Positions 8,301 through 64,000 of a stretch of 64,000 bases of DNA are shown here, in pieces. The stretch's first letter is position 1. Each line of letters opens with the position of its first letter. Below the pieces are notes generated by a model that saw nothing but the letters and a program-made list of their open reading frames with translations, did no database searches and was not told the DNA's origin. The stretch is from Haliotis rufescens (lineage: Eukaryota): NCBI RefSeq assembly GCF_023055435.1, contig NW_025963846.1, positions 2,976,001 to 3,040,000 on the forward strand, written 5' to 3'. A program made the position numbers and the translations under genes.

Positions 8301-11300
8301 TTCTACATTTCTGTAGAAAAGGTGTGAACAATACTGGCCTGCTGAATACGAGAGTGACTGCTATGGAGACTTCAGCATAACCAACAAGAAGGCAGTCGCG
8401 AGAGCTGACTACACCACATCAACCTTTCTGGTTCGAAAATCTGTATGTATATTATATAATATCGATATCATGATATGTGCTTGAAAGTAACGAAATATAT
8501 AATTCGTATGTATTTTTTGTATTCGCGGGGTATAATCACATATTGTATTGTCAAATATTTACATTATTATATGAAACATATTCAGCTTCCTGTTAGGAAT
8601 TATATTAATACATGTACATCAGTTCATTATTGGTCCTACACGCAGACTGAAGAGAGAGTAGTGAGACATTTTCACTTCACCTCTTGGCCAGACCATGGTG
8701 TCCCCTCCGCCCCAGCCCTCGTCAGCTTCTGGAGAATGGTCAAACAGGAAGGCGCGAAAGGCAGACCCATGGTCATTCATTGCAGGTAGACGTGAAGATC
8801 CGGCTTACAATAGGTCTTCAGCAACCCAGGCTTGCTGTAAAAACGACTCTGCTTGTCGTTAGCGGCGACTAACGGGATCGGGTGGTCAGGATCGCTGACT
8901 TGGTTGATGCATGTCAATGATCCCAGTTGCGTGGATCGATGTTCATGATGTCAATCACTGGATTGTCTGGCCCAGACTCGATTATTTACAGACCGTCGTC
9001 ATATAGCTGGAATATTGCTGAGTGCGGTGTTAAACAACAAACAAACAAACAAATGATAGTGATTTATAAACAAATGCTCACGATAAAGTCGGAATTGTAC
9101 GTTTGATAATTGGCAGAGATTTCTTATGAATATGGAAAGGGTTTTGTCACTTTTATTTATATGCAGCGATCTTCTTCTTCATCAGCGCAGGTGTTGGCCG
9201 GACAGGGACATTCATTGCTCTTGATCATCTGATGGAGGAGGCTGAGAATGAAAACAAAGTCAACGTGTTTATGTGTGTTGGCAAGATGAGAGAAGACCGG
9301 ATGAACATGGTCCAAACAGTGGTGAGAATGTTGCAATCATTACGTATATCCATGTTATAGTCTGATGTAGCCTCTCAATGAGCATACAAACGATTTTGAC
9401 CTTACCTGACCTCTTATGCACCTTTTATTTGTTGCAGCTTTAATCAAAGGCAACAAGTTTGAATAGTGGTTAATGAGGGGATGGATCATTTCCGGAATAT
9501 GAACTCATATTTCTTCATGCCACTTGCAGACCTCAGAAATGCTGAATTTGTGCCTTTTTCGAATCCTATTCAGTGTTGTACTTTACTTTATTATTGCGTT
9601 TTCAAGGTAACAGGTTCTGCATTTCTCCATTTAATATGCCACGGTTTCTATTGTTCTCAGAGAAGTGAAAGAATGTATCTTTACCGTACAAGGATTGCAG
9701 GTATAAGGGTGAATTGTCCTTATATAAATTGTAGCATTAATTATGCATATTATGTTCCTTCACTCTCGAATGACGAAATACAATAAAGCCTTAAATAGAT
9801 CGAGCTTTTTGAAGTTTGAACCTTTTGCCATTATCTGCCAGAGCCAGTATGAGTTCGTGCACGATGTTGTGTTGGAAGCAATTCGTAGTCGGGGAACGTT
9901 CTTCACGTCACCGGAGTTCGAAAAGGAATTTGGTCAAGGGGAGACCTTTACTGAACCACAGGAAACCAAACTGAGAAAACAGTTTCAGGTAGGTTAGTTC
10001 TCCATATGTGTTTGTTAGTGTAATCTGTAAGAATAAATACAGTTCAAGTTGGTGGAATGTTACGTCACTTAATGGCTATTCTCAAGTAGTTGGTTATACA
10101 CATATTCATTGACACGCATGTTGGGAAATCTTACCTGGACGTCCAGAAGGTCGTGATGAACGCTGTTATAAAGGAGTATACCATCCACTTCATTTCATCA
10201 ATTGATAAGTACTGATCACAGACTTGACATCTGACCGTGATATACTATATACTATATATACACACCACGTCGTTGCTTAAATGTTTCTGTGTATATTTAA
10301 CCTTGTTATCTAACACAAGGAAGTCTTCACAAAAGATAATTGACGAGGTAAAAATTATGTTTGTCTTCAGTTACTGCAAGAAAGTACATCCAGGCTGTCA
10401 GAGGAGACAGTGTCGACAGCTCTTCTACCTCAGAATGCTGCTAAAAACAGGAGCCGAACTATTCTTCCAGGTACCATAACACGCGATGGAATATATTCAT
10501 ATTTCTATGCCTGTTCTAAGAGACTGCCTCCGTGGTCTTGTGGTAGAGCGTCCGCTCGGAGAGCTGAAAGTCCGGGGTTCGATTCCCGGCCGCGTCATAC
10601 CAAAATACGTTAAAATATGGTACTTCTTGTTACCCTGCCTGGCGCTCGGCATTAAGGGGCTAAAACAAGGACTGATCTGCTTGTTCCTCAGTGGGCTAGC
10701 ATTATAAAATCGGTATCAGTCCGGACCAGTACAAGCAGCCACACGCACAAACACGTGCATGTACGTCGCTATTTAAGTGCAATAATCTTGGACGCGATGT
10801 TAAGTCCCATTTCACCTCACCTCCTGTTCTCGGCATTATGGCTGGAAGGGATAATACAATGACCAATAGATGGCCAAAGACTATGTTACGTACAGTTCAT
10901 CGTCAGTTATCACCTACTAAGTGTCCTCCATGCTGAACGTTTATGTATTTCTTGCGAATCAAAACAGCAAGATGAGGACCAGAGAGGCCAACACTGGCTG
11001 TAAAAAGTACAAACATTTGGCTTCACGGCTCCAAGAGTTCACGAGAGAGCTAGCACAGAAGACAATAAGAAACTGTACATGTTCGTGCTTTTCTGGATTA
11101 TTTATCTTGTGATTAATAATACGGTTTATCTGTTGCAGGAAACAAGACGAGGCCTCATCTGACCACACGGGTTCACCAGCGCAATAACTACATTAATGCT
11201 GTAGTTTTGTCTGTATGTATAAGGGACACGGGTGGCCCAGTCGTCTAAGGCGCCGCTATTCGCTGTACAGAGTTGCGTCCCTTGGGCACGCCAGAAAACT

Positions 11301-14300
11301 ACGATTGTGGGTTCTAATCCCGGTTCGCCCCGATTATGTTTCTAGGTTTGTCAGCACCATACCCGTGCTCGTCGGTTTCACTGAAGTGGTAAACTTCTGA
11401 GACCTGCATCACTTCAGGCTTTCCTCCCACTGGAATACTGTTAAAAGCGGCGTTAAACCAAACTCACTCACTGGCTCACTCTGTATGTATAACCTCTGCA
11501 TGTACACATATATACATGTCAAACACACTGTACCCAATGTATTTGAAATATATGCATTGCATATATATACCTTACTGTATTTTACAAGGAGTGTGGTAGC
11601 TCAAGGCTAACAACTATTAATGCCTTATGTTTTCGATTATTTGACTTTTCACATTGGGTATGTGGGGAACACCTATTGATATCGAGAAATACTCTTCGAT
11701 ATTTGCGGAAATGGAATTGACAATACCACATAAATGTTCATGTTTGCTACTGCAGTCTATACTCCGGCCCAGCAGCCTGATAGTCACCCAGACGCCCCTG
11801 CCAGACACCGTGGTGGACTTCTGGAGACTGGTGTACGACCATGACTGCTGCACAGTTATCTGCCTGGATGACTCTAAGGTTACGTTAATCGTTAACTTCA
11901 GAGTTATTATTTGTTTGTTTGTTTGCTGTTTAACACCGCAGTTATTGTTTGTTTGTTTGTTGTTTAACACCGCACTCTGCAATATTCCGACTATATGACG
12001 GCGGTCTGTAAATAATCGAGTCTGGACCAGACAATCCAGTGATTGGCATCATGGGCATTGATCCACGCCATTGTGTTCTTACTTCACCTATCACTAAGCC
12101 AAAGAACAAATAGCAAAAAATATATATATTTTAAGTGAGTTAATGTTTCATACCACTTTCCTCTATCACTTCTTCTTTCGTTGAAATCTAACCATAATGA
12201 TTAGTATTCAGTTATTCTTTTTTCCCTACCGTTACAAGAAATTATATAGACGTATAAATGTCGGATCTCAGCAATATTACTTCTATATGACGGTGGTCTG
12301 CAAAAAAACGAGTCTGGACCAGACAATGCAGTGATTAATATCATGAGCATCGATCCACGCAATAGGGATCGATGACATGCATCAACCAAGTCAGCGAGCC
12401 TGACCACCCGATCCCGTTAGTCGCCTTTATGACAAGCATAGTCGCCTTTTACGGCAAGCATGGGTTACTGAAGACCTATTCTACCCCGGATCTCTGTGTG
12501 AAGTGTGACCAGACAATGTGTAGCTATTAGTGAAATGTTCCCTTAAAACATACAATGTATGCAAATAGAAACGGTCTTGTTTGTTAGTGTGAGAAGTCAA
12601 TCTAAAACTATGCTTGTGTTTATTCTAGGAGGTAGAGAACGTGTACCCTAAAGAAAACCAAAACTTCAAGAAAGGACCGTTCACTATTGTACTTGAGAAG
12701 GAGAATTCAAACAGGGAGGATTACAGAGAGAGAAGCCTGACCGTTCTGCATGACAAGGAGGTCAGTTATGCCTGGGATTTATATTTAGCAGTGCATACTA
12801 TTGACACATAATCCATAATAAACTTCAAATGTTGCCATGTGTTAACCAAACTAACAGTTCCACAAACTGACATTTTCAGTTGTTTCATCAATCAAATAAT
12901 CAATTTATGTGACGGATGGTTGACTTAATTCACTAGCACGGACATTTCTTGAATATGTCTTCACTTTGAATTGATTACATGAGCTAATAATTGAAGTTAC
13001 TTTACGAACTGAATACCACCGAAATAAGGATATATCTAAACATGACTAACAATAGCCGTTGATATTCAGTAGATCGTATGTTAGTACTACTGTAAACTAA
13101 GAATTAAGACGTTGTTCAAACATCATGGTCACATAATGACACTGGATGCATCCTGTAATCTAGGGTTGTGAGCGATCCGTCGTCGTGTTCAGTCTCAAGT
13201 CTCTGGACATGATGTCCCACCCTGCCACACTACTGGAGCTGGTCAACAGCGTGCACATGGTCATCACTTCCGCCGATCACAAAGTCCTTGTCCACTGCCA
13301 GTATGTTCCACACACTCAAATACATAGCCCTGACAGATTAATGTGTATGGATTGCTGTTGTAACACGTTGAATATTCCATGTAATATCTTTAGGTTTGAT
13401 GGTCTGTATGACGGTTTATATTGAATGTATCATTTGACCGTGTCGTTCTTTGATGTTCCCCACATAATATTTCATACTTGTACTCTTAGGGAGCTTTTCG
13501 AAGCGCGAAATAGTCAAAATAGCGCACATCAAACCCTTCGGTAACGTTAAATGAAATCATTTACATTATTTGGACGATTAGCTTCAGTAGAATGCATACA
13601 GCTGAGTTACCAGCATGCTAAATACATACAAGATTAATCATGGTCAGCTGTGTGGTGTGAGAGGGAATTTATATGAACTAGGCAAAGGACACCTTTCTTC
13701 AATTCATTCTTTCTCACATTTGTTTGTGTGTTGGACATGACAGTGACGGCGCCAGTGTGAGCGGCGTGTTCTGCAGTGTCCTCAACATCATCAGCAGACT
13801 GAGGCTGGACAGAGACGGGGACATCTTCCTCTCCATCAGGGAACTGCAATGTGTCAGACCTCAGTTCATACAGTCCTTTGTGAGTATTTGAAGCGCAATT
13901 CTGTAATAACAGAACCTGTGGAAACTGATAATACCTTACATTCCATTTTCCATACTATATATGTACTATATATGTTGTATGGTCAGAGTTATAGCGAAGT
14001 ACTGCTCACATAAATGTTCTGTAGAAGAGAAGGTGTCTGTTTGATTTAATGCGTGTCTCTCATTAGATGTTATTACCCAATATGAAACTTGAAAACAGCT
14101 CACACTATTGCAAATGAGGAGCCACGATTGGGAAACAATTGTCACATTGCAGTGGCTAAAACAACTGGAACTTATTTAATGTACTATATGTCTATATGTA
14201 CTCAATACAGCTCAATGCAGCGACCAAAGCAAATAATTGTGGCCAAACAAACAAATACCTTCATGTACAAACTGTGTAAGGGATTTGTTGTGTAATGGAG

Positions 14301-40500: not shown

Positions 40501-43500
40501 CTATCACAGTATTTATTACTCTGACTATCACATGTTTTTATTACACTGACTATCACATGTTTTATTACACTGACTAGCACAGTATTTATTACACTGACTA
40601 TCACATGTTTTTATTACACTGACTATCACAGTATTTATTACTCTGACTATCACATGTTTTTATTACACTGACTATCACAGTATTTATTACACTGACTATC
40701 ACATGTTTTATTACACTGACAAACTGTTACTGACTATCACAGTATTTATTACACTGACTATCACAGTATTTATTACACTTAATATTTATTACCCCGATTA
40801 TCACACTATGTAGTAACGTCAGCCGTGCATGCTAAAACAGTATGATGGAGTGGGCTTTCCCATGAGTTTGATAAAGAGTGTGTCATAAGAATATCGGTTT
40901 TTCAATTCACCAGGCTTTATTCAACATCATGTGCGAGGACCCAGAAAACGACACCATTACGTTGACACAGAAGAATCACGTGGACCTCTTCCATATTGTC
41001 AATTCTACTGTAATCCTGAAGCATATACTTGACTTTGAAAAGGACCGGCAATATTCCCTCAAGATAGAGTAAGTACTCCTTGTTTGAATACAATAAACTA
41101 GGTAAAACCATAATATAATGTGCCCCGGGTATACTCGACTATTTGTAACCGATGGGGGGCGGTCGGGTAGCCTGGTGGTTAAAGCGTTCGCTCGTCACGC
41201 CGAAGACCCGGGTTCGAATCCCAACATGGGAACAAGGTGTGAAGCCCATTTCTGGTGTCCCCCGCCGTGATATTGCTGGAATATTGCTAAAAGCGGCGTA
41301 AAACCAAACTCACTCACTCACTGTAACCGATGGCGATAGTTTAGTTTTGTTTCATGAGTGACATCTGAGAAGCACTTCAGAAGGGAACTGAGAAAGATAA
41401 TTGTGCACTCATTACAATTACCTTCATGGCTTTAGCATAACATTAACAGTGAGTGAGTTGTGTTTTACGCCACTTTGAACAGTATTTCAGCTCTATCAGG
41501 CTGTGTCATCTTGATGTTGGAGCAGAACTCGCAGTGATGCGGGTCCGAAGCGTTCACAACGTTGGTGAAACTAACGTGCTCATCATGGTGTTGACAAACC
41601 TAGAAATCTCCTCATGGGGAATCTTGGAATTTAACCTACGCGCACAGCCCTACAACAGTTACCTTATTTTTTTGTCGTTTCGTGTCGTCATAGTCAAGGT
41701 AAGCCATGACTTAGCTAATCTCGTGGTCAGAATCGGGTCATCTTAGTCAAGGAGTGATTGGTCAATCGACTCCTACTCCGAACTGTCTCTATCAACATTC
41801 ATGTACCGGCCCTTGCATACATCAGGAGTAAACACAACACACAGGTTATACTCCCATACTTTTCATAACGCTCCAGTCCATCTACAAATACAACTGCTAA
41901 ATAAAACAGGCAAGACTCGTCATAGACTGGACACAAACTTTATATATATATATATATTGCAATATATTACAATATTGCAACCACGTCATTGCAGTTTCTA
42001 TTTTCTAACGTTTTTTAAGACTCATTGTATCCTTATAACAATACCTAGTCATTTTGATGCCTTCAGAAATATGCTGCTTGTTTGTGTGTATGTATGGTTC
42101 CTATTAAGCCTGTAAGCATGGACAGTATTGTACTTAATACGATGCAAGCTGTAAGAGTTGTACAATGCATCCTTTGTATTTAGACTCAGAACGTTTCCGT
42201 CAAGCCTCGTTGTTTGTGTTTCAGTGCTCATTATGAATCAAGTTGAAAGCAGCTTTTTGAATACATATATTATCATAATCACGTAAACGGTTTATTATAT
42301 ATATATTTTTTTTCTAATTTGTTTATTTGTAAAGTTAGTGTTACATACGTATACATGTATTTTATTTATTCGTATTAGATGTGTTCTCTGTTTTGTGCTT
42401 CTATGTTCGTCCTAATTATCTTAACGGCATTTGTATGATCTTAATCTGATCTTAGCTAATCTCAATGAAGTGCTTATTTACTTACAATTTGCTATTTCAG
42501 AGCGTTTGATGGTCTATCTCAGAGCGTCTGATGGTCTATTTCAGAGCAATTGATGGGCTTTTTCAGAGCGTTTGATGGTCTATTTCAGAGCGTTTGATGG
42601 GCTCTTTCAGATCGTTTGATGGATTATTTCAGAGCGTCTGATGATCTATTTCAGAGCGTTTGATGGTCTACATACTGTCCTTGTGGCTATGAGTGTCAAA
42701 GTTGTGGATGTAAATGACGAAATTCCTGTTTTGAAAATCAGCGATGACCTCTCGATTCCCGAAGAGTTGAGGGTTGGAACTGTACTCAGCGGCTTGTTTG
42801 ACGCAACTGATGCAGATCGCAACGACGATCTTAAATATAACTTACAAGGTTAGCATGGATGATCATCTGTGACCTATAGAACAACACAAATTCTAACAAC
42901 AATAACCGAGACTGGTTAATTATTTGTGAAAACGAGTTTTCATTAATTCTATCAATATAATAGTTTTTGTCTTTGAATGGCATTTAGAAGTGATACACAT
43001 AAGGAAGAGAATTTATGGATGTCAATTTCTTTCGTATGACCAAACACAACGTTTCAGAGTATATGCATACTCCTTCATCAGGTGAATGAATGCTATGAGG
43101 CAGAGAGCATGTATATGTACATGTAATGTACTTTTGCTTTCCTTGCATGTGCATATATATACATGTAGTTGCATGAAAATATTTCATGATCACTTTTGAC
43201 TGAGCCCTGAATAATGGCTCAGTATACGATCGGAGAACCCGTGGGGTATGACAGCAAAGCTCAAAGATGTCACTTTTCAACTCAAACTTAACTATCATAT
43301 CATTTCTTTAGTAACATAATTGTAAGAGAGTATGGGTATTGAACATGTCGAATGTGACTTTGTTATTTTGAAGGGGGACACAATTATTTCGCCATCAATG
43401 AGGCCAATGGAAAACTGACACTGAAACGAAGAATCGACTTCGATGGTGTTCGTGGTGTAAAGAAGATTGACAAGATGACCTTGACCGTCACCGATAAGGG

Positions 43501-51135: not shown

Positions 51136-51305
51136 GGGGGCGGTCGGGTAGCCTTCTGGTTAGAGCGTTCGCTCGTCACGCCGAAGACCCGGGTTCGATT
51201 CCCGACATGGATACAATGTGTGAAGCCCATTTTTGGTGTCCCCTGCCGTGATATTGCTGGAATGTTGCTAAAAGCGGCGTAAAACCATACTCACTCATTT
51301 ACTCT
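51136..51305 (+). mobile_element. SINE family A
   Basis: TSD cactcaatgc. Confidence 0.88.
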
Positions 51306-52642: not shown

Positions 52643-55600
52643 CTGAAAAAAAACACATACAGAGCTTAGAGAGTGTACAATTCTGAGTGAATGAGATAGG
52701 CATATTAATCCTTCTAAATACACACCATGAACAAGGAAAAACCACAATGAGGTGAGGTGAAATTGGGTTTAACGTCGCGTCCAAGATTATTGCACTTATA
52801 TAGCGACGTGCATGCACGTGTATGTGCGTGTGTGGTTGCTTGTACTAGTCCGGACTGATGCCGATTTATAGTGCTAGCTCACTGAGATACCAAGCCGCAG
52901 TTTAACACGAATACCCCACTCAGACACAGTATACTGACTCCGAGCCGACCAGTCCTTGTTTTAGCCCTTTAATGCCGAGCGCCAGACAGGGTAACAACAA
53001 ATACAATCTTTTAACGTCTTTTTGTATGACGCGGCCGGGGATCGAACCCCGGACCTTCCGCTCTCCGGGCGGACGCTCTACCACAAGACCACGGAGGCGG
53101 TCCACCACAATGAAGCATCAAAACGACATACAACTTTGTTTGTATTTCACCAACCCGAAGCATACTACAGATCAGTTGTTACAACAAAAGGCTCATGCTT
53201 TTAACATACATTCGAGTGGAACAGACCATCGAGTGAGTGGGTTTGGTTTAACGCCGCTTTGAGCAATATTCCAGCAATATCACGGCGGGCGACACCAGAA
53301 ATGGGCTTCACATATTGTACCCATGTCGGGAATCGAACCCGGGTTTTCGGCTTTAACCACTAGGCTACCCGACCGCCCCTGGAACAGACAAGTATTCTCC
53401 CTTAGCACTGTTTGTCATTATTTTGATAAGGTTCCTCAATGGCACTTACAGATGAAGTGATGATGGCGGGTCGAATGCACTGAAGCTCGCGGACAATCAA
53501 GAATATGTCCACTTCCTTGTCCATCTTCAACCGGCTGATGATGTTGGACACTGCACAAAACAAACCTGATCGGCTCGCACCATCCCTGAAAACATGTTTA
53601 ACACCTGGTGTCATCATAGAACTTCAGTGACCTATTCATAAAGTTTTAACCGCTGTTTGCCTTTTACGCCTAGTGGAATCTGATTCAGCGGATAAAAGAA
53701 ACTTGTTGTTCTCTGGCGTTGACGTTTAATATTTACAAATGTAATAGAGACTGGGTTACTGAATGTTGTATTGTGTACCCCGTCCACAATATTTCAACGA
53801 ATTCACGGCGTCCCGTTAATGATAGATTTGGGTAAGGCAAACCAGAGGTTGACTGCATGAGCAAAAATGCATGATATGACACAGTCAACTTGGGTCACAC
53901 AATTTAACCATCATATTGTTGTACACTTGGTACTTGGGACCCTTGACAATCGATCCCGAAGTAGAAGTTATGTTGGATCAAGGTAGAAAATCCCTGGACA
54001 ATAAAAGATTATAATTTCCAAAACGGTTTACATATTTAGATTGTGCCTTTATTGTTTGTACCTGCCAGTGATGATCTGAGATACATCAAACCAAATGATG
54101 AGTAATATATTCTCATTATATGCTCATTTTAACATTCAGGAAGTTAAACGTGGCGAGCGACAATTCAACCTCGACCGGACACACTGTCACGCCCTCGAGT
54201 TGTGAGGGACTTTCCGAATCCTGACGGATAAGTTTTCATCTGGACGCTTTGTCACACGACAGCGGGACTCGCGGACTTACAAGCAATGGACGATGATCGG
54301 GTGTTGTCCGGCGTCCTTCTGCCTCTTCACCAGCATCTCCAGGAGCAGTAGAAGAACAAACTTATTGGTGGGAGTGTCCTCATTAACTGACCAGTCGGGT
54401 ATACTGAACACCTTGACGTGGCGGCTTGGCGTGAAGTCATCCTGAGGAAAGCAAAAACAAGAAGAAAGAAATGTGTACCTTATTAATCCATTGTTAGTGT
54501 ACTGTTTGAGAACGGGAAGTTCCAGAACAGCAAATATACACTGTACAGAAATAGATAGAAATGGCCTAACAATGTGACCAAACAAATGGTATTTGTTAGT
54601 CTCTAAGAATGTTTTTTTATAGCGTTGGATATAGCCCCGATACTTGATGTGCCAAACAATATGACCAAAACGAATGTTATTTGCTTGTCTCTAAGAATTT
54701 CTTTTCATTGGATATAGCCCTGATCCTAGATGTGCCAAACTATGTGACCAAACAAAAGATATTTGCTAGTCTCAAATAATGTTATTTCCATTGGATATAG
54801 CCCTTATGCTAGATTTGCGCATTATATAGGTCAAACAATGTGAAACTTAACATCATCTCCCTCCTTACTTCTTTCTTCAGTAGGCGGATTCTAGGAGTCT
54901 GCCAGATAAGGAGACTGAGGGGGCACTGGCATTAAGAGTGAGTGAGTGATTTAACGCCGTAAGATTTAACGATTTAACAGTATTCCAGTTATATCACGGC
55001 ATGTAAGCTCAATGTGGGAGGAACGCCCGACGTGATGCACACGTTTACCACTTCGGTGAAACCCACGAGCACGGGTATGGTGCTAACAAACCTAGAAACA
55101 TATTCGGGGCAAACCGGAATTCGAAGCAACAATCATAGGTTTCTGGCGCACCCAAAGGAGCAACTCTGCACAGCGAATTGCGGCTCATAGACGACTGGGC
55201 CACCCGTGCCCCAAGTAGCATGAAGATGTTCATGGCCAAACATAATTCTCAAAAAGTCTAAAAAGGAACATGCTTGGTGGATAGTTTGTTGTGTATTTCC
55301 AGCGACATATTAACATGTAGGTACCAAACTGTCTGCTTCAGTCATACATACATTTGAACCTCCTTCTGATGCATGACGTTGGATTTGTCGGAATCAATAT
55401 TAGTGTTCAATTCAAAGAGATAACCATAAAACAATGTCTGTGTGCACCTACCTCGCCCTTAGTTCGTAAAATGACAGTTTTCTCTGGAATTTCCTCTCTC
55501 GTGTTGACTGTAGACTTCAACAGAACCTCAAACTTCCCCACCGACAGAGCCTCGCCTTCCCTCAGAGGCATATATTCTCCGTAGTCCTGTCACATACGTA

Positions 55601-58600
55601 TCTTACTTACTAAAGGAAAGCGAACGCAATGAACCCGATGATCATATCCTATAAATGATATCGTTATGAAAAAGCAAAATATTCACAAAGAATAGTTCAT
55701 TTGAATGTTACTGTAACAGTTACGTAATGTATGACGGAAATATCGGAACTGAATTTTCAGTGTTTAACTATACTGATATTTCATTATAACTGTGAAAAAC
55801 TATTCCAAACATCACTACGATGAAGTAAATGGTGGGAATCACAGCGCCGTCATGGTAAAAAATTAAGGATTCCATCAATTTTCAAAGTAACATGATTTGA
55901 TCCATCTTCGATTATCCAGGATATTACATCTCAATTCTACTTTGATAAGTAGCCTGGATCAATTAGCTACCACAATTTCTTGATAAAACATATTCGAATG
56001 GCACGACTCTAAAATAGCCGTCCAATCAAATAACTCTCGTTACCATGGAAGTGCTGTGATATGTTAGAGTGATGGAGGTGGTGACGTCACGTTCATAACG
56101 AAGCTGCGAATGAGTCCAGGGCCCCATCCCACAAAGCGATCGTAGCGATATGACAGTCATAACTCCCACACTTTAACACTAAAAAAAGTCTTCTTACGAC
56201 ACTCGTACTGCTACGATCGCTTTGTGGATGGGGTCCAGGGTGCCGTTGCACAAAACGACCTTAGCACGACGAGTGTCGTAAGTCTATGTTAAGGTATGGG
56301 TGTTACGATCACCTTGGCGCTAAGATCGCTTTATGGAACGGGGCCCAGGGTATTTATCATACTAGTATGTGGATATAATACACTCAATCATCCAGGATGA
56401 ATATAATCTAATATCGTAAAGTTGATGGGAATGTCTAAATCAAATTATTATTAATCTGCAAACTGAAGCCAAAGATAAAAAATCCTTAACCAGACGAAGA
56501 TTTGCGGCGAAGTGATGTCAAGGGTATTCACCTTCAAGTCGACAGGGTTGAGATCTGGGGGCGTGAGGGACACAATGGTCACCGACTCCTGCTCCTGAGC
56601 TAATGTCCAGAACTGCTCTACGCTGTGGAACAGAGGCTGCTGTGTTACGATGAACCCTCGGCGGTGCAGCACGGACTGGAACAACAACATATAACAACAA
56701 GCATGAAATACTCATTCCCCCGCCAGTGTGATATGTCCGGTTGTGTGCATGGCATCAGCCCTCCGGAAACGAGAACTACCGCCATGTTTAGTCAAAGTCG
56801 TTGCTATGGAAACTCGAAAAATAAAGTTTTCAAAAATCATAAACTAGCAAAAGGCACCAGTTACACTGGGCCTATATATGTGCCAAGTTTGGTGAAGAAA
56901 TATCGTAAGGTTTTCAATATCTACTCCGGAAAGCAGCACAACCGCAATCTTCAGTCTAAGTTACAGTCGTTGTCATTGAAACTCGAAATATATTTTTTTC
57001 AAAAATCTCAAACTATCAAAAGGCACCAGTTCACCACTAGACCTATCTATGTGCCAAGTTTGGTAAAGATGTCTCTTATGTTTTTTAGTTCTGCTCCGAA
57101 AACGAAATGTGACGAACGGTCGGACGGACGGAAGGAGGGTAGGATGGACGGACAACACCCATTCCAGTATCCCCCTTCCACTTCTTGGCGGGGATACTAA
57201 TTATATAAAGTATGTGAGGTGAGATGCGGTTGACGTCGCGTTCAAAATTATTGCACTCATATGGCGAGGTGCAAGCATGAGCGTGCATTGCGTGCGTGCG
57301 TGCGTTTGTGTGTGTTTGTGTGTATGACCGCTTGTACTGGTCTGCTTGTTGGCTTTATAGTGCTAGCCCACTGAGATATCATACCGCTGGTTAACATGAA
57401 CACCCAACTCAAACACTGTTTACCAACTCCAATCCGACTAGTCCTAGTTTTATCACGTTAATGCCGAGCGCCAGGCAGGGTAAAAACAAGTACCATATTT
57501 TAACCTCTATCGGTATGACTATTTTCATATGACGCGGCCGGGGATCAAACCACCGACCTTACGCTCTCCAGGCAGAAATAAGGTCGTAGTCGAAGTCGTA
57601 GTCGTAGTTGTAAATATGTAGTCGTAGCACTTTGGCCCCACTGAGGTGTATTCACTTGAATTTATACTGCTTAAAAATGATAATATAGTATATTACATTG
57701 AAATTAACAGACCAATTAAAACCGCAGCCACGATTTTGTCAACAAATTCTAGTACTGCTTTTTGTGTAGGCCAAGTGTCATTCGTATAAAGAATAAGCCG
57801 TCTGTTCCTGATGCTGCATTTGAGGTTGAATCGAAAACTGCAGTAAGCAGAACATTCTAAAAGACTTAACGCCTCACACAGTCCCAGTTATATGAGGGTT
57901 GTTTGTATATAATGAAGTCTGGACCAGACAATCCAGTGTTTCACATCATGAGCATAGACTCAAACAATTGGGATACGTTGACATGCAATCAGTGAAGACC
58001 GAGCCTAGCCATCCGAACCATTTGGTCGCCTCTTACAAGCATAGGCAGCTGGGAAAGTATCTTCTTACCAGGAATTCCCACTGGTGATCAAGTATATAAG
58101 GGGTTTGTACACATTAGTGATGCAGGTCTCAGACGTTTACCACTTCGGTGAAACCCACGAGCACAGGTATGGTGCTGACAAACCTAGAAACGTAATCGTG
58201 GCGAACCGGGATTCGAACCCACAATCATAGGTTTCTGGCGTGCCCAAGGGACGCAACTCTGCAGAGCGAATTGCAGCGCCTTAGAGGACTGGGCCACCCG
58301 TGCCCCCCACTTATTGAAGTCATGGTCAAAAATAAATTCAATGTGTAAAACATACCTCTCTTGTATTGTAAGGTTAACAATATAAGTATTGGTGATAAGC
58401 TTGTTACGTCTTACCGGTAGATACACGGCGTTGATGTAAGGGTTTTGGTTTCCTGATGTTCCTTTCAAAACAACACGGTGGAGAACACCTGAAATAAAGA
58501 CCACATAGCGTCACCATGATTGATCAAAATACTGAAGACGTATAGAATATAGTTTTAGAAAAGCGAATAAGTTCGGTTTAAAGTCGCTAAGAAAAATTTA

Positions 58601-61600
58601 CCGCCGGATAAAGAATTTGTGAACACTTAAAAAATAGAACTGACCAAATAATTACAAACGTTATCGAAACGTTACTAGGCTGAAGCACTGTAAACTTAAG
58701 GTCCAATACACAACTATGATACTGGTATCAAATACATCACCATCGAATTACCATTTCTTTTCTTTTGCCCGGCATTATATTTTACATGTAGAGTGCCTTG
58801 TTAAACAAGGAAGATAGTTCTATGGATATACAACAGTTATTTCTTTATTACAAGGAATGCAACACCGTTATCAAGCAAGTGATGTACAGAAAAGGTCTCC
58901 TTTCTAGGTTCTTTGTTTGAAGCCAAGAACATCTGCTCCATGCCAGAACACCCTGATAACATACAGCTACCCTGCCAGACTCGTAGACTAGACCTTAACC
59001 CCACCCTCAACCCCTCACCACCAAACAGCTCCATTTACCATCAGCCTGCCCTAAATAGGTACAGATCGCCATCAAATCTGCCGCGTTCATCTTATTCCAT
59101 TAAAGATATATAACATGACGCCTCATTATTTATCATAAATGTGACGCACTGTTGGAAGTATTTATCAAGCGTTTTGATGCGCACGTATAATACCTTACTG
59201 TGCTTCTGAATACTAGAGCAACGTGTGTGGTGTTAACAGGTTTGGTGTAATAAAGATACCTGGCAAGATATCCATTGATCTGTTTTTCCCAACGTTATCT
59301 TGTCTTCGGGCAATTTGAGTATCTTCTTCACGCAGAGTTGGCCGCATACTTTCTAGAACCTGAAAATAAGGTGATCACCATTTGCAAAATCTGCTGATGA
59401 CCTTGCTACATTTTCAAAATGTCAGTCTCAACATAGAGACCATTTTCGGTGTTCGAATACGAAGCCATTACTTTCCCTTGTAATATATTGTAGGATTTGG
59501 GCTTTATATTATTATGCTATATTTTACATTCGATTGTCTTGAAACAGTCTTGTGTTCCCCCGAAAACTATAATGAACACACACGCACGCACGCACGCACG
59601 CACATTTTGTCTCTAACTATTTCCATTACCAGATATAATCGGTCACTGTATCTTGACTATAACTCTACAATAGCACCAGACAGTGAAGCAAAGTTTAGTT
59701 TACCTGGTACTCAGCCCGTGGCCGACTACTGTCTGCCAGAGATCGGAAAGACTGTGCTCGGTACTTCTCCATAAGCTCCACGCTGCTGAGGAGAGTGTCC
59801 TTACTGGCTAGCATCTCCTGGAGGGCCAGGTGGACACCGGCATACTGCACCTGGGCACAGACAGAATTCACACGGTGGTGAGTGATTCGGTTTAACGCTG
59901 CTAGGAGTGTCAACCTTGATGTAGGAGGAATGGGATGCAGGCGTTTATTAAAGGTGAATCTGGGATTCAAACCAACGTTAGTGATAAGTACCTTTAGCGG
60001 TACGCCGAGTGTTGGGCGAGTGCTCTCCCTTAGCGCGACGCCAAAGGTACATGTATGAGAAGGCACGAATCCAGCAGGAAAAAATCAGCAAACACACATT
60101 AACACTACCCCCCCTCCCCCCCCCCCCCCCCCCCTCTCTACCGATGCTGATATTTCCGGATGAAGTATGTATTGGAAGCACAGATTACACAGTTGTTAAT
60201 CGCTGTCATTATATTGCGTTATCTTACCAACACCCACGGGGGGCGGTCGGGTAGCCTAGTGGTTCAAGCGTTCTCTCGTCACGCCGAAGTCCCAGGTTCG
60301 ATTCCCGACATGGGTACAATGTGTGAAGCCCATTTCTGGTGTCCCCCGCCGTGATATTGCTGGAATATTGCTAAAAGCGGCGTAAAACCATACTCACTCA
60401 CTCACTCACTCACCAACACCCACGAAAATAGATGTCCCGCATGACCAAGGGACGCAACTCTACAAAGTGTTTGTGGATTTGTGTGTTTTGGAACTGGCTT
60501 GTATTTGAACATATTTCTACAGTTCGGACATATTTCTTTAATTGTTTCGTGACATACCCTGGTTCGAACCATTTCCGGTCTGTGTAGCCTCATCCTGCAC
60601 ACAAACTTAAAGACATCCACTTCCGATTCCGTCCTGGCTTGCTCTGCCATGGCGTTTATAGCAATGAAGGTTCCTGTTCGCCCGACACCAGAACTACAGG
60701 AGTGAAGGTAAGTACTGATTGTTATACACGTACAATAATAAACGTTAAACCCCAGTTCACCTCACCTATTAACAATTATATTATAGTGGCAAAAATAGAC
60801 ATCTCTGTGTTAATGAATCACTATGAAATAGTGATGATACCACGTGCTCATGAAAAGATGAGCGTATCTTGCCCGACCGGTCGCTCCCGTTACAAACACA
60901 AATGCAAAGCCAAGTCAAGTGATCACATGAACAAATACGGAAACATTAGGTACAAGTCAAACTAGAGAATTTCATTGGGCAAATTTAAACACTGATGCGT
61001 CAAATTTGAAAATGTCCTCCACATGCCAACCATAAAACCTTTTGAAATATTTACTGATGCCTTGAATAAATGCTACCAGCATATCTTGAATACAGCAGAG
61101 GCGAATATATGAACAAGTGTTGTAAGTTAAGATAGTTATGGATAAACAGTCATCATTTTGTCTCTGTTTGTGATTAATACGTTGTCCAGAGTAACAAATG
61201 CGCGGAACCAGTCAGATATCGGCCATAGGGATATTGTCACTTACCTGCAATGTACAACCACGGGGCAGGTGGGACTGGTTAGCTTGTTCACGTGTTTGAT
61301 GAAACCGACAAGAGCAGGAGTTGAAGGGAAACCATTTGCTGGCCAGGACACGAACTGAAACTGTGTCACCACGCGTTTCTCAGCAGCCTTGAACAGAATC
61401 AAATGAATATCAGTTATATGATTTGTTAATTTTTTTGGTAAAAACAGAGGTAACTATGTATGGTGTGATGATACCATTATTTATCGTCGTGGATGGAAAC
61501 GTGCGTTAATGACCTAGAAACCTCTACTCTCAATGCCCTCATGACAGAGAAAGTTCTTCTTACCTTTCAGTCGTCGAAATTGATCTCATTGTCAGCATCA

Positions 61601-63961
61601 AATGATTTACATTTCCGATTGTCGTAGATATTGATTCCATTGTCAGTATCAAAGGATTGACACATCCGGTGATGTCATTTTCAGTATCAAAGGATTGAAA
61701 TATCCGATAGTCGTAGATATTGACGTTATTGTCGGTATCAAAGGATTAACAAACCCGGTGATGTCACTGTCAGTACTGAAAGATTGACATACCCGATTGT
61801 CGTAGATATTGATTCCATTGTCAGTATCAAAGGTTTGACAAACTCAGTGATGTCATTGTCGGTATCAAGGGATTGACATATCCGATAATCGTAGATATTG
61901 ACGTTATTATCGGTATCAAAGGATTAACAAACCCCCATGATGTCACTGTCAGTACTGAAGGATTGACATACCCGATTGTCGTAGATATTGATTCCATTGT
62001 CAGTATCAAAGGTTTGACAAACTCAGTGATGTCATTGTCGGTATCAAAGATTTGACAAACCCGGTGATGTCATTTTCAGTATCAAAGGATTGACATACTC
62101 AATGGTCGTAGATATTGACGTTAGTGTCGGTATCAAAGGATTGACAATCCCGGTGATGTCATTGTCAGTATCAAAGGTTTGACATATCCGATGGTCGTAG
62201 ATATTAATTCCATTGTCAGTGTCAAATGATTGACAAACCAGGTGATGTCATTGTCATTATCAGAGGATTGACATTCCCGATGGTCGTAGAAATTAATTCC
62301 ATTGTCAGTGTCAAATGATTGACAAACCAGGTGATGCCATTGTCAGTATCAGAGGATTGACATTCCCGATGGTCGTAGATATTAATTCCATTGTCAGTGT
62401 CAAATGATTGACAAACCAGGTGATGTCATTGTCAGTATCAAAGGATTGACATATCCGATGGTCGTTACTATTGATGTTATTGTCAGTATCCAAGGTGATG
62501 TCATTGTCGGTATCAGAGGCTGTGCCTACCTGGTGGTCGTAGACGTAGAACTCCCTGACGGTGTAATGAGCTCGGGTCACCATCTTGATACACGTCACAG
62601 AGAGATTTCCGTACGTCTTTCCATCTTTGACGTCTGGCCAGTACTTCTGACATTTCACCTGAAATGTACGTTCATCGAAATGTAAAACGTCAACGAAAAA
62701 CATGTTTCTTGATTTTCTGCCGAAACAGATTCCGAAAAAGACAAAATACAAGTAACTGAATGGGGCCCCTGAAAACAAGTGATCACGCTAGGTGTTTGCG
62801 AAAAGGGTAATTATGTTCTGCCCTACCTGTTGACACCCACACAATTTGCATAACAATTAAAAGGACGCTGCACAACACGAAAACTACCATGCGACGGCGA
62901 CAATAGAATATTCGTGGATCGATGTTCACCCCGACAATTACCGCTTTGTCTGTGTGCGTTAAACAAACAAACAAGGAATTATAAAATATTTCTCATTATC
63001 CTGAAACAAAAGAAAGTATATCATCTAAACAAAGAAGGACGGTTCACGTTTTCTTCACATAATTCTAAATTATGGATCACATTATTAATATTTCTTATAT
63101 TTGTATCCAGCAAATAGATCGTGGCCTATCCAAATAGTATTGATGTAGAATTTTAGTCAGGATCATGGAAACACTATTCATATACATTAACAAAATATGA
63201 AAACGGGAACGTATTTTCTTAAAATGTGGCCTTTGAAACCCCGCATTCAGTATCTCTTAAATGTTTATTTAAGTTGTTGGACAGGGATGGCGTTTTATCA
63301 TGTATCTAGATCACAATGCAAGACATGACACGTTGTAAATCACTATAGAAAATGCCTACCTTGCCATTCTCTTTGGTCCTGCTCAACATGACCACTTTGC
63401 AGACATTCCTTTCCCACAACATTCTCCAAAAGTCATTCACAGTTTCTTCCGTAGGACCTAATGAAAAGATCAGTCTTAAAGTAACAATTACACAACGATA
63501 CACATAACGAATTCTATTATCTAGATTATCATTTGAGACATGGGACGAACTTTATCGATAATATGTCAAATATGATCATTACGATTGCTGTCTTACATTT
63601 GTTGGTTCTTTGAATTTTGTATGAACAATCCTTGTTCGGTATGTGGACCCAACATGAGCGTGTCCTATTCATTAACGAATATCTATATATTTTTCGACGT
63701 TCAAAGGTGTTTGTCGCTTTGATCGTGAAGTTTAAGTGTTGTGTGCACAGTTATTGTCTTGTGTTGGACAGGTTAGCATTGTTTTGAATGAAAACAGTTT
63801 CTTTCTTCCACTTTTCACTTTTCAGGCGCCACGGATCCGGAAACCAAGTGAAAAGGTATTCAAGGGAAAACAAGCGTTCACACTGATTACTGACACAAGA
63901 CAACCCTAACAGTGTCCTTCCTACCTTGTGTAGCTATGTACTCTTCCATTATTATGTATCC
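52577..63961 (-). CDS. Second tandem-domain receptor-type PTP (RPTP-2, paralog of RPTP-1), likely pseudophosphatase; 5' exons outside the window
   Basis: 13 phase-consistent exons: 63961-63925, 63457-63360, 62658-62530, 61387-61245, 60693-60558, 59850-59704, 59359-59260, 58488-58415, 56675-56532, 55586-55452, 54441-54281, 53585-53450, 52642-52577. Motifs YIATQGP, DFWRMLW, KCQKYWP, WPANG, HCSSGVGRTG, MVRT; D2 HCLDGASRSG; ends NPEPLA*. Confidence 0.92.
52750..53102 (-). mobile_element. SINE family B, full length
   Basis: TSD accacaatga. Confidence 0.9.
53231..53379 (-). mobile_element. SINE family A
   Basis: TSD tggaacagac. Confidence 0.85.
53450..53585 (-). CDS. RPTP-2 D2 exon
   Basis: DGASRSGLFCAVSNIISRLKMDKEVDIF... 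Confidence 0.92.
54281..54441 (-). CDS. RPTP-2 D2 exon
   Basis: RHVKVFSIPDWSVNEDTP...HPIIVHC. Confidence 0.9.
54560..54845. repeat. Diverged ~85-bp tandem repeat, ~3 copies
   Basis: aacaatgtgaccaaacaaa...ttggatatagccc recurs. Confidence 0.75.
54935..55212 (-). mobile_element. SINE family C
   Basis: Homology to 49481-49762. Confidence 0.85.
55452..55586 (-). CDS. RPTP-2 D2 exon
   Basis: DYGEYMPLREGEALSVGKFEVLL... Confidence 0.85.
56120..56345. mobile_element. Two adjacent Harbinger-type MITEs (56120-56235, 56239-56345) delimited by CAG triplets
   Basis: Long TIRs ggccccatcccacaaagcgatcgtagc / gctacgatcgctttgtggatggggtc; pattern cag-M1-cag-M2-cag. Confidence 0.75.
56532..56675 (-). CDS. RPTP-2 D2 exon
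   Basis: GFIVTQQPLFHSVEQFWTLA. Confidence 0.9.
56717..57197 (+). mobile_element. Helentron-associated (DINE-1/HINE-like) non-autonomous element
   Basis: Internal duplicated block (tgtgccaagtttggt x2), (GACG)n tract, 3' palindrome cccc...gggg followed by atac. Confidence 0.55.
57214..57575 (-). mobile_element. SINE family B, diverged
   Basis: Homology to 52750-53102. Confidence 0.8.
58115..58308 (-). mobile_element. SINE family C, 3'-truncated
   Basis: Head and body homology to family C. Confidence 0.85.
58415..58488 (-). CDS. RPTP-2 D2 exon
   Basis: HRVVLKGTSGNQNPYINAVYLP. Confidence 0.9.
59260..59359 (-). CDS. RPTP-2 D2 exon
   Basis: ...ARRQDNVGKNRSMDILP. Confidence 0.9.
59704..59850 (-). 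CDS. RPTP-2 linker exon
   Basis: VQYAGVHLALQEML...AEYQ. Confidence 0.88.
60239..60410 (+). mobile_element. SINE family A
   Basis: TSD accaacacccacg. Confidence 0.9.
60558..60693 (-). CDS. RPTP-2 D1 exon (P-loop, Q-loop)
   Basis: [16 protein letters not shown]...MRLHRPEMVRTR. Confidence 0.93.
61245..61387 (-). CDS. RPTP-2 D1 exon (WPA loop, catalytic Cys)
   Basis: RVVTQFQFVSWPANGFPSTPALV...PVVVHC. Confidence 0.93.
61580..62516. repeat. Composite satellite of alternating ~37/48-bp monomers (cattgtcagtatcaaaggattgaca)
   Basis: Directly visible; begins ~15 nt into an RPTP-2 intron. Confidence 0.9.
62530..62658 (-). CDS. RPTP-2 D1 exon
   Basis: VKCQKYWPDVKDGKTYGNLSV... Confidence 0.92.
63360..63457 (-). 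CDS. RPTP-2 D1 exon
   Basis: GPTEETVNDFWRMLWERNVCKVVML. Confidence 0.93.
63925..63961 (-). CDS. RPTP-2 D1 exon
   Basis: GYIIMEEYIATQG, 37 nt. Confidence 0.88.
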
Positions 63962-64000
63962 CTGAAAGAATACATACACTGTGAACAACACTCTACATGT

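What the first reader, a model, noticed from the sequence alone, without database searches (positions are those of the whole stretch)
60558..61387. Natural substrate-trap-like D1 in RPTP-2 (WPD->WPA plus Q-loop Q->R, Cys and Arg retained)
Seen: D1 reads WPANG (Ala codon 61337-61339), HCSSGVGRTG, and MVRTRVQY (Arg codon 60564-60566) where RPTP-1 has WPDHG and MVQTVSQY. All 13 exons are open and in phase, so this does not look like a decaying pseudogene. Established: Asp->Ala at this site (PTP1B D181A), especially with loss of Q262, is the engineered substrate-trap design; IA-2/PTPRN naturally has WPA and PTPRU is a two-domain pseudophosphatase. D2 here also lacks the acid (WSV). Inference: a catalytically crippled receptor that binds or shields pTyr substrates, or acts as a decoy for the active paralog.
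Basis: partly seen in the sequence, partly recalled or inferred. Interest (0 to 1): 0.8.

Follow-up and report, generated by a model that had tools for sequence, protein, structure and literature searches.

The report
Abalone receptor with dead phosphatase domain
A red abalone cell-surface receptor keeps a well-conserved, expressed tyrosine-phosphatase domain whose catalytic residues are replaced at three sites, much as in the known inactive IA-2 proteins, so it probably binds rather than cleaves its targets.

Summary
On the minus strand, D1 of this two-domain receptor PTP reads WPANG (Ala 61339-61337), HCSSGVGRTG across a splice site, and MVRTR|VQY (Arg 60566-60564). PDB alignments place the Ala on the WPD Asp and the Arg on the first Q-loop Gln. 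Spliced RNA contigs from four runs join every predicted exon border and carry both codons.

The gene is RefSeq LOC124144901 of Haliotis rufescens. Orthologs in H. rubra and H. asinina keep the Ala, the Arg and the P-loop.

The P-loop Ala is Ser, the substitution reported to inactivate HD-PTP.

WPA plus a Q-loop Arg is also the natural signature of IA-2/PTPRN. A domain tree places this D1 with abalone paralogs, so the likeness looks convergent (AU p 0.057, or 0.034 without the trait columns).

D1 is 92-95% identical between species, against 75-83% for the ectodomain and juxtamembrane region. Twelve of 13 variable exon sites are synonymous.

Verdict: a conserved, expressed D1 pseudophosphatase. 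This is an independent new variant of a known kind. pTyr trapping is plausible but untested, because the WPD-loop hinge residues vary between species. Nothing supports a decoy role towards the neighbouring RPTP-1. Interest is moderate.

The parts
63925..63961 (-). D1 mini-exon, GYIIMEEYIATQ plus one base
   Evidence: Read. Joint 63457|63925 seen in RNA contigs of four runs. Matches P0122 residues 1262-1274.
63360..63457 (-). D1 exon, (G)[32 protein letters not shown]
   Evidence: Pfam PF00102 E 7e-10 (sent as 63360-63473). Joints at both ends.
62530..62658 (-). D1 exon, VKCQKYWPD...REFYVYDHQ
   Evidence: Pfam PF00102 E 6e-6. Joints.
61245..61387 (-). D1 WPD-loop exon, reading WPANG and ending in HC plus AG
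   Evidence: PDB alignment. RNA contigs.
61337..61339 (-). Ala codon (GCA) at the position of the general-acid Asp
   Evidence: Unchanged in four runs apart from a synonymous GCC in one contig. Ala in all three orthologs.
60558..60693 (-). D1 exon holding the rest of the P-loop (S|SGVGRTG) and the start of the Q-loop (MVRTR)
   Evidence: Pfam E 7e-12. PDB alignment. RNA contigs.
60690..60692 (-). Ser codon (TCT) at the P-loop position that is Ala in canonical PTPs (HCS-A-G)
   Evidence: 54 of 54 paralog rows have Ala. Invariant Ser in three orthologs. The same change is reported to inactivate HD-PTP (PMC2661844, passages).
60564..60566 (-). Arg codon (CGA) at the position of the first Q-loop Gln (PTP1B Q262; numbering recalled)
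   Evidence: No difference in four runs. All 53 paralog rows that reach the column have Gln. Arg in three orthologs.
59704..59850 (-). D1 last exon, VQYAGVHLALQEML... then the linker
   Evidence: Joints.
59258..59359 (-). D2 first exon, VLESMRP...NVGKNRSMDILPG (KNRS in place of KNRY)
   Evidence: All four variable sites are synonymous.
56532..56675 (-). D2 exon, SVLHRRGFIVTQQPLFHSVEQFWTL... (limits are tblastn bounds and may overrun the splice sites by a few bases)
55452..55589 (-). D2 exon, DYGEYMPLREGEAL... (approximate limits)
54280..54444 (-). D2 exon with DWSVNED in place of the WPD loop, ending in IIVHC (approximate limits)
53450..53584 (-). D2 exon, (L)DGASRSG...IRPAIITS. The P-loop reads HCLDGASRSG, with Asp at the Ala position as in IA-2. 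The Q-loop Gln is replaced by Thr.

Best explanation
The gene is LOC124144901 of red abalone. It encodes a 1762-residue type I receptor with a long stalk of about 43-residue Cys-rich EGF-like repeats, one membrane span, and two PTP domains.

D1 has lost catalysis at three sites: the WPD general acid (Asp to Ala), the P-loop Ala (to Ser) and the water-positioning Q-loop Gln (to Arg). D2 is also non-canonical.

D1 still keeps the phosphate cradle (His-Cys-x5-Arg), an aromatic residue in the KNR[F/Y] loop and the second Q-loop Gln, and it is strongly conserved.

The most likely working is therefore non-catalytic. D1 would act as a phospho-ligand binding or scaffolding module on a ligand-sensing receptor, in the manner of IA-2 or PTPRU. 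It would hold or shield phosphotyrosine proteins, or compete with active RPTPs, rather than dephosphorylate them.

Shown: the residues, splicing, transcription, conservation and purifying selection. Inferred: loss of activity (from the known effects of these substitutions in other PTPs) and binding.
For: - Residues and alignment to known catalytic positions.
- The three changes are derived. 28 of 29 paralog exons have WPD. All 53 rows that reach the Q-loop column have Gln, and 54 of 54 have the P-loop Ala.
- Expression and splicing in four runs, with both codons unchanged.
- Orthologs in H. rubra and H. asinina keep the Ala, HCSSGVGRTG and MVRTRVQY.
- D1 identity is 92-95%, against 75-83% for the ectodomain and juxtamembrane part.
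- Variable sites in RNA contigs: 8 synonymous to 1 non-synonymous in the D1 exons, and 4 to 0 in the first D2 exon.
- Literature, read as passages only. Asp181Ala lowers PTP1B kcat about 10^5-fold and Gln262 mutation about 100-fold (PMC10267100). P-loop Ser makes HD-PTP inactive and S1394A restores activity (PMC2661844). PTPRN and PTPRN2 are listed as inactive, and PTPRU is a tandem pseudophosphatase that binds substrates of its paralogs (PMC7320164).
- PTPRN proteins carry WPA and a Q-loop Arg.
Against: - No enzyme or binding data exist.
- Cys and Arg are kept, so slow or altered catalysis, for example on phosphoinositides or a special substrate, is not excluded.
- HD-PTP inactivity is itself disputed in the literature: PMC5710140 is listed, and its abstract calls PTPN23 a key phosphatase.
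- The WPD loop varies at 3 of its 7 residues between species (P = 0.02 for that named loop, but 0.43 for any 4-residue window). That argues against a finely tuned closing trap.
- No formal dN/dS was possible, because ortholog coding DNA could not be fetched.
- The runs are only guessed to be RNA, although intron-less contigs support that.
- No structure was modelled.
Confidence: 0.68

Rival explanations
1. D1 is a true natural substrate trap in the strict sense of the engineered D181A/Q262A design. It would bind pTyr substrates tightly with a closed WPD loop and release them very slowly, sequestering them from active paralogs.
For: - Asp to Ala, plus loss of the Q-loop Gln, with Cys and Arg kept.
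- The PTP1B double mutant has very low activity and about 400 nM affinity for a JAK peptide (PMC10267100, passages).
- D1 is strongly conserved.
Against: - The Gln is replaced by a long basic Arg, not Ala.
- The extra P-loop Ala to Ser change is absent from the engineered design.
- The residue after the Ala is Asn or Asp, not Phe or His, and the hinge Pro and Gly are not conserved: WPANG, WLADD, WIADD. PMC10267100 attributes slow release to a closed loop and F182.
- No binding data exist.
Confidence: 0.3
2. D1 is still an enzyme, with low or altered specificity. It could be a phosphoinositide or other non-pTyr phosphatase, or a very slow and highly specific PTP, using another acid or none.
For: - The His-Cys-x5-Arg cradle is invariant.
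- PTPRQ, with WPE, prefers phosphoinositides, and some predicted pseudo-PTPs have reported substrate-specific activity (PMC7320164, passages).
- H. rubra and H. asinina have Asp residues one and two positions after the Ala (WLADD, WIADD).
Against: - Three catalytic positions are hit at once.
- The nearby Asp residues are absent in H. rufescens (WPANG).
- The same P-loop Ser abolishes HD-PTP activity in vitro.
- IA-2, with two of the same changes, is listed as inactive on generic substrates.
Confidence: 0.15
3. The gene is a recently disabled paralog drifting towards pseudogene status, or the odd codons are assembly errors.
For: The genome holds a very large PTP expansion: 575 first-look candidates and 160 matches for PF00102. 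Dying copies are to be expected in such a family.
Against: - All splice joints are used, and both codons are present in contigs of four runs from four studies.
- Full-length open orthologs of 1762-1764 residues exist in three species.
- 12 of 13 variable exon sites are synonymous.
- D1 is the best-conserved part of the protein, together with D2.
Confidence: 0.03

Closest known systems
IA-2 / PTPRN and PTPRN2 (R8 receptor-type pseudophosphatases)
   Same: The WPD Asp is replaced by Ala in vertebrate PTPRN (WPAEG, WPAQG). The first Q-loop Gln is replaced by Arg (LVRSKDQF, MVRTKDQF; a barnacle N2-like protein reads MVRTRGQF). The P-loop Ala is replaced, while Cys and Arg are kept. The proteins are listed as inactive on generic substrates (PMC7320164).
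   Different: IA-2 has a single PTP domain and another ectodomain. Its P-loop change is Ala to Asp, not Ser; here it is D2 that carries the Asp. The domain tree puts the abalone D1 with abalone paralogs (SH-aLRT 93). Forcing a clade with IA-2 costs 13-15 lnL units (p-AU 0.057 and 0.034). The likeness therefore looks convergent.
PTPRU (R2B tandem pseudophosphatase)
   Same: A receptor with two PTP domains, both predicted or shown to be inactive. The D1 changes are evolutionarily conserved. The proposed role is a scaffold that binds substrates of active paralogs (PMC7320164, passages).
   Different: PTPRU has WPE, GSRQ in place of KNRY, and a Thr in the P-loop, and its pTyr pocket is lost. Here KNR[F/Y] is kept and the changes are Ala, Ser and Arg. 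The ectodomain also differs: EGF-like repeats rather than the R2B type.
HD-PTP / PTPN23
   Same: The same P-loop change (HCS-S-G in place of HCS-A-G). It is reported to abolish activity, and S1394A restores it (PMC2661844, passages).
   Different: HD-PTP is a non-receptor, single-domain protein. As read its other departure is an incomplete Q loop. Its inactivity is disputed (PMC5710140 abstract).
Engineered PTP1B D181A/Q262A substrate trap
   Same: Loss of the general acid and of the first Q-loop Gln, with the nucleophile Cys and Arg retained (PMC10267100, passages).
   Different: Here the replacement is Arg, not Ala. There is an additional P-loop Ser. The loop residues that close over the substrate are not conserved. 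The abalone state is natural and about as old as the genus.
Gastropod MEGF/GBD receptor PTPs (Biomphalaria SudRes1 genes)
   Same: Extracellular EGF-type repeats plus intracellular tandem PTP domains in a gastropod, within a paralog-rich family (PMC12297450, passages).
   Different: That paper describes polymorphic, presumably active, RPTPs linked to schistosome resistance. In the passages read it does not describe a dead D1. Orthology to the abalone gene was not tested.

Membership tests
Classical PTP domain (Pfam PF00102) | Significant profile match over the domain | tested here: met
   Four D1 exons each score above the cut-off. The H. rubra ortholog has two stretches, E 2e-121.
Classical PTP domain (Pfam PF00102) | His-Cys-x5-Arg phosphate-binding loop | tested here: met
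   HCSSGVGRTG across the 61245|60693 splice. Invariant in three species.
Catalytically competent classical PTP | General-acid Asp in the WPD loop | tested here: not met
   Ala aligns with the Asp of PTPRS and LAR D1. Ala in all three orthologs.
Catalytically competent classical PTP | First Q-loop Gln | tested here: not met
   Arg aligns with the Gln of MVQT in PTPRE and PTPRA. All 53 paralog rows that reach the column have Gln.
Catalytically competent classical PTP | P-loop Ala (HCSAG) | tested here: not met
   Ser here, while 54 of 54 paralog rows have Ala.
Catalytically competent classical PTP | Measured phosphatase activity | not testable with these tools
   Needs recombinant protein.
Engineered-type substrate trap (D181A/Q262A design) | Asp to Ala and Gln to Ala in an otherwise wild-type active site | tested here: not met
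   Asp to Ala is present. However, the Gln is replaced by Arg, and there is an added P-loop Ala to Ser change.
Engineered-type substrate trap (D181A/Q262A design) | Conserved WPD-loop closing residues (Pro, aromatic or His, Gly) | tested here: not met
   WPANG, WLADD and WIADD in three species.
Engineered-type substrate trap (D181A/Q262A design) | High-affinity, slow-release pTyr binding | not testable with these tools
   Needs SPR, ITC or pull-downs.
IA-2 / PTPRN family (R8) | Single PTP domain with the IA-2 type architecture | tested here: not met
   There are two PTP domains. The EGF-like repeat ectodomain is seen in L002 and in P0122.
IA-2 / PTPRN family (R8) | Active-site signature: WPA or WPE, P-loop Asp, Q-loop Arg or Lys | tested here: inconclusive
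   WPA and Arg are shared. The P-loop has Ser, not Asp.
IA-2 / PTPRN family (R8) | Phylogenetic placement inside the family | tested here: not met
   The best tree places the domain with abalone paralogs P0059 and P0078 (SH-aLRT 93). The AU test of a joint clade gives p 0.057 and 0.034 without the trait columns. This is marginal, and the group was named after the tree had been seen.
Gastropod MEGF/GBD tandem RPTPs | Extracellular MEGF-type EGF repeats plus tandem PTP domains | tested here: inconclusive
   Repeated CxxGxYGxxC...CGxC...C...G.C...C..G..G..C units are seen by eye in L002 and P0122. Pfam called no ectodomain family at E<=0.01. The N-terminal galactose-binding-like domain was not shown.

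The most novel reading that the evidence does not exclude
The abalone lineage has independently rebuilt the IA-2 active site (Ala for the acid, Arg for the Q-loop Gln, a changed P-loop Ala) inside D1 of a tandem, EGF-repeat receptor. It has then kept that state under strong constraint since before the living abalone species split.

If so, this recurrent triad would be a selected design for a non-hydrolysing phospho-ligand reader pocket, not mere decay. The receptor could act as a phosphotyrosine-protecting or dominant-negative partner of the many active paralogs in a large, possibly immune-related, gastropod RPTP family.
Probability: 0.2. Interest if true: 0.6.

Novelty: new variant of a known kind. 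Interest (0 to 1): 0.36.

Why it matters
Pseudophosphatases are known, but well-documented receptor examples with a dead membrane-proximal domain are few. IA-2 and its paralog have a single domain, and PTPRU is the tandem case.

This is a natural, conserved and expressed invertebrate case. It reaches nearly the same active-site substitutions as IA-2 from a different starting point.

If the domain binds phosphotyrosine proteins, it would offer a natural comparison for what these substitutions are selected to do. It would also give a handle on signalling by the greatly expanded EGF-repeat RPTP family of gastropods, a family that one study links to parasite resistance in snails (PMC12297450).

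If the domain is simply inert, it is one more dead member of a large gene expansion.

Tried and rejected
I used protein identity by region and synonymous versus non-synonymous counts from RNA contigs instead.

2. Orthologs outside Haliotis.
   - The exon search of 1.84 billion representatives gave 121 proteins at E<=0.001. Only one was at E<=1e-10: P0001, H. rubra.
   - The D1 region of P0001 searched among proteins of comparable length gave 1616 hits at E<=1e-20, of which the best 120 were listed. After its own cluster the next were 40-44% identical LAR, PTPRD or PTPRS type proteins.
   - No closer relative was seen, so the age of the Asp loss beyond the genus is unknown.

3. AU test on the full 123-domain tree. 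It did not finish in two runs of 288 s. I reran it on 36 domains that I chose myself, dropping 87 rows. I kept the three focal D1s, two abalone paralogs, 12 IA-2 family rows, 16 other D1s and three D2 outgroups.

4. Ectodomain naming by Pfam. Nothing appeared at E<=0.01 beyond the PTP families.

5. The idea that RPTP-1 is the partner or parent. Rejected: it is only 41-48% identical in the central D1 exons, and closer paralogs lie on another contig.

6. Literature searches.
   - 'pseudophosphatase' plus 'mollusc' found one unrelated paper.
   - 'Haliotis' plus 'tyrosine phosphatase' plus 'EGF' found 15 papers, of which 10 were listed. None of those listed is on this gene.
   - On these two searches alone, I found no description of this protein in print. 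Supplements were closed and may hold gene lists.

7. Structure prediction and fold search. Not done, because they would need the joined D1.
Full report
**What is at the coordinates**

The window is G000:C68:2976001-3040000 of a 1.33 Gb genome. On the minus strand lies the 3' two-thirds of a two-domain receptor PTP gene.

Reading 60400-61500 and translating gives three exons:
- Exon 61387-61245 encodes AAEKRVVTQFQFVSWPANGFPSTPALVGFIKHVNKLTSPTCPVVVHC plus the bases AG.
- Exon 60693-60558 starts with a T that completes AGT (Ser). It then reads [45 protein letters not shown].
- Exon 59850-59704 starts with VQYAGVHLALQEML.

Pfam PF00102 matches each of the four D1 exons tested. phmmer against PDB chains aligns the Ala with the Asp of WPDHG in PTPRS and LAR D1. 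It aligns the Arg with the Gln of MVQT in PTPRE and PTPRA.

Two details needed correction. The FWRMLW exon begins at 63457, not further up. A 37-base mini-exon (63961-63925, GYIIMEEYIATQ) precedes it, with the same layout as in RPTP-1.

**The rest of the gene**

The 5' part lies beyond the window. I fetched it as L002-L004 and read L002 on the minus strand. It holds:
- the SYINASHID exon;
- the pTyr-loop exon, NQSKNRFPRVLP (Phe where the canon has Tyr);
- a juxtamembrane exon;
- a membrane span;
- a run of exons, each encoding one EGF-like unit of about 43 residues.

RPTP-1, on the plus strand at about 6190-13885, also reads KNRF. It has WPDHG, AGVGRTG and MVQT.

**Is it real, expressed and spliced?**

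Thirteen DNA runs from four studies hold more than half of the sampled words of 59600-63600. Six small runs hold 11-18% of the words, close to the share of that stretch that the exons make up.

I laid four of the small runs, labelled as organisms A, C, D and E, on 59200-64000. Their contigs skip the introns exactly at 59359|59704, 59850|60558, 61387|62530, 62658|63360 and 63457|63925. All these skipped stretches have GT..AG ends on the minus strand. The join 60693|61245 follows from continuity within single contig records of X15 and X17.

No run differs at the Arg codon. The only difference in the Ala codon is GCA to GCC in one of two contigs of X20. The runs are only guessed to be RNA, but intron-less contigs are hard to explain otherwise. 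Depth from contigs cannot rank expression.

**Identity of the gene and its orthologs**

The WPA exon, searched alone against 1.84 billion representatives, gave one strong hit (P0001, 89% identical, E 6e-19). The other 120 hits scored 54 bits or less.

The cluster of P0001 holds three proteins:
- XP_046568155.1 of Haliotis rubra;
- XP_048252746.1 of H. rufescens (P0122), on a contig of 35,286,876 bases, the length of C68;
- XP_067684586.1 of H. asinina.

This confirms the earlier scan notes that the genome is red abalone. All three proteins are named 'uncharacterized protein'.

In their alignment the WPD loop reads WPANG, WLADD and WIADD. The Ala is invariant, but the Pro, the next residue and the Gly are not. 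HCSSGVGRTG and MVRTRVQY are invariant. The pTyr loop reads KNRF, KNRY and KNRF.

D2 is non-canonical in all three species. It has KNRS, DWS[V/A/G]NED in place of the WPD loop, HCLDGASRSG, and Thr at the Q-loop Gln position.

The P-loop is HCS-S-G, whereas canonical PTPs have HCS-A-G. In a tblastn of the P-loop exon on 60 loci of this genome, two rows were the gene's own locus. All 54 paralog rows begin with Ala-Gly, and all 53 rows that reach the Q-loop column have Gln. Some loci overlap, so there are fewer distinct genes than rows. For the WPD exon, 28 of 29 paralog exons read WPD and one reads WPV.

All three changes are therefore derived and specific to this gene.

The same Ala to Ser change is reported to make HD-PTP inactive, with S1394A restoring activity (PMC2661844, passages). 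For PTP1B, Asp181Ala lowers kcat about 10^5-fold and Gln262 mutation about 100-fold (PMC10267100, passages).

**Constraint**

Between H. rufescens and the other two species, identity by region is as follows:

| Region | Identity |
|---|---|
| D1 | 92-93% |
| D2 | 90-93% |
| N-terminal domain | 77-79% |
| EGF-like repeats | 81-83% |
| Membrane and juxtamembrane part | 75-76% |

Between H. rubra and H. asinina, D1 is 95% identical.

In the RNA contigs, 9 sites vary in the D1 exons. Eight are synonymous and one gives Thr to Ser. Four sites vary in the first D2 exon, and all are synonymous. Under neutrality most changes would be non-synonymous, so selection is purifying. The count is small, and alleles and species are mixed.

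Three of the 25 variable D1 columns fall in the 7-residue WPD loop. That gives P = 0.02 for the loop named in advance, but 0.43 for any 4-residue window. This is a weak hint that the loop itself is less constrained.

**Comparison with IA-2**

A motif scan of the 242 stored proteins covered a sample biased towards hits of this exon and of D1. It showed that proteins named PTPRN in bat, rabbit, a marsupial and a fish (names) read WPAEG or WPAQG, HCSDG or HCSNG, and LVRSKDQF or MVRTKDQF. N2-like proteins of a barnacle and a mite read WPE, HCSDG and MVRTRGQF or MVRTKSQF.

The pair 'Ala for the acid, Arg for the Gln' is therefore the natural IA-2 signature, together with a replaced P-loop Ala.

A tree of 123 PTP domains puts the abalone D1 clade next to two abalone paralog D1s, an H. 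cracherodii protein and H. rufescens XP_048252782.1, with SH-aLRT 93. The clade sits on a stem of 0.69 with tips of 0.015-0.024. The IA-2 family forms its own clade with support 100.

Forcing the abalone D1s and IA-2 into one clade in a 36-domain set costs 13.3 lnL units (p-AU 0.057). With the nine trait columns removed it costs 14.7 units (p-AU 0.034). The group was named after the tree had been seen, and the branches are long. Convergence is therefore favoured, not proven. The tandem architecture and the EGF-repeat ectodomain also argue against IA-2 membership.

**How it most likely works**

- Shown: an intact, transcribed and conserved receptor whose D1 lacks three catalytic residues but keeps the phosphate cradle and an aromatic pTyr-loop residue.
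- Inferred from established PTP enzymology: D1 has little or no phosphatase activity.
- Inferred by analogy with PTPRU (a scaffold that binds its paralogs' substrates; PMC7320164, passages) and with IA-2: it acts by binding. It may hold or shield phosphoproteins, or compete with the many active paralogs. PF00102 has 575 first-look candidates in this genome.

The strict 'substrate trap' reading is weaker. The replacement is Arg, not Ala. The P-loop is altered. The loop residues that PMC10267100 credits with slow release are not conserved here.

A role as decoy for RPTP-1 in particular has no support.

The architecture matches what one paper calls MEGF-type gastropod RPTPs, which it linked to schistosome resistance in Biomphalaria (PMC12297450, passages). 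Orthology was not tested, and Pfam did not name the ectodomain.

**What was left out**

I made no fold or full-length search of a spliced model of my own. 

**Verdict**

- The thing is a conserved D1 pseudophosphatase in an abalone EGF-repeat receptor PTP.
- It is an independent, IA-2-like variant of a known kind.
- Interest is moderate, because dead members are expected in so large an expansion and function is untested.
- The convergent triad under strong constraint is the part worth a bench test.

Noticed in passing
window 60240-60383 (also about 41118-41317, 51176-51298 and 53280-53408): A short interspersed repeat sits in the intron between the P-loop and QY exons. It is present in an enormous number of RNA-run contigs: summed word depth is 3x10^5 to 7.6x10^5 in the bins that hold it, against tens for the exons. 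Many contigs have loose ends there. It looks like an abundant transcribed SINE-type element.
   Followed up: no
window 8640-8786 (RPTP-1) and L013 (G000:C68:3279180-3282317): The WPD exon of RPTP-1 has a near-identical copy about 296 kb away on the same contig, with one amino-acid difference over 45 residues. RPTP-1 therefore has a recent duplicate, whereas RPTP-2 is a singleton.
   Followed up: partly
window 13745-13885 (RPTP-1 D2): D2 of RPTP-1 reads DGASVSG where RPTP-2 D2 reads DGASRSG. It thus lacks even the P-loop Arg. D2 domains of this family look non-catalytic in general.
   Followed up: no
L021 (G000:C68:6558269-6561406): One other paralog on the same contig has WPVHG in place of WPDHG in its D1 WPD exon. 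It is probably XP_048252782.1, whose D1 reads WPV, HCRAG and MIQT. This may be a second, independent loss of the acid.
   Followed up: partly
window 6190-6207 and L002 about 670-690: Both RPTP-1 and RPTP-2 read KNRF rather than KNRY in the pTyr-recognition loop. The H. rubra ortholog of RPTP-2 has KNRY.
   Followed up: partly
G000:C594:50792398-50793927: The best PF00102 match in the genome is an intron-less open frame of 991 residues that holds two complete PTP domains (E 4e-65 and 5e-53). That is unusual among the otherwise exon-split PTP genes here. It could be a retrocopy or a contaminant.
   Followed up: no
window 59306: The assembly has T, whereas contigs of three runs have G and a fourth has A. 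All three states are synonymous (CGA, CGC, CGT), so this is a polymorphic or species-variable third position.
   Followed up: yes
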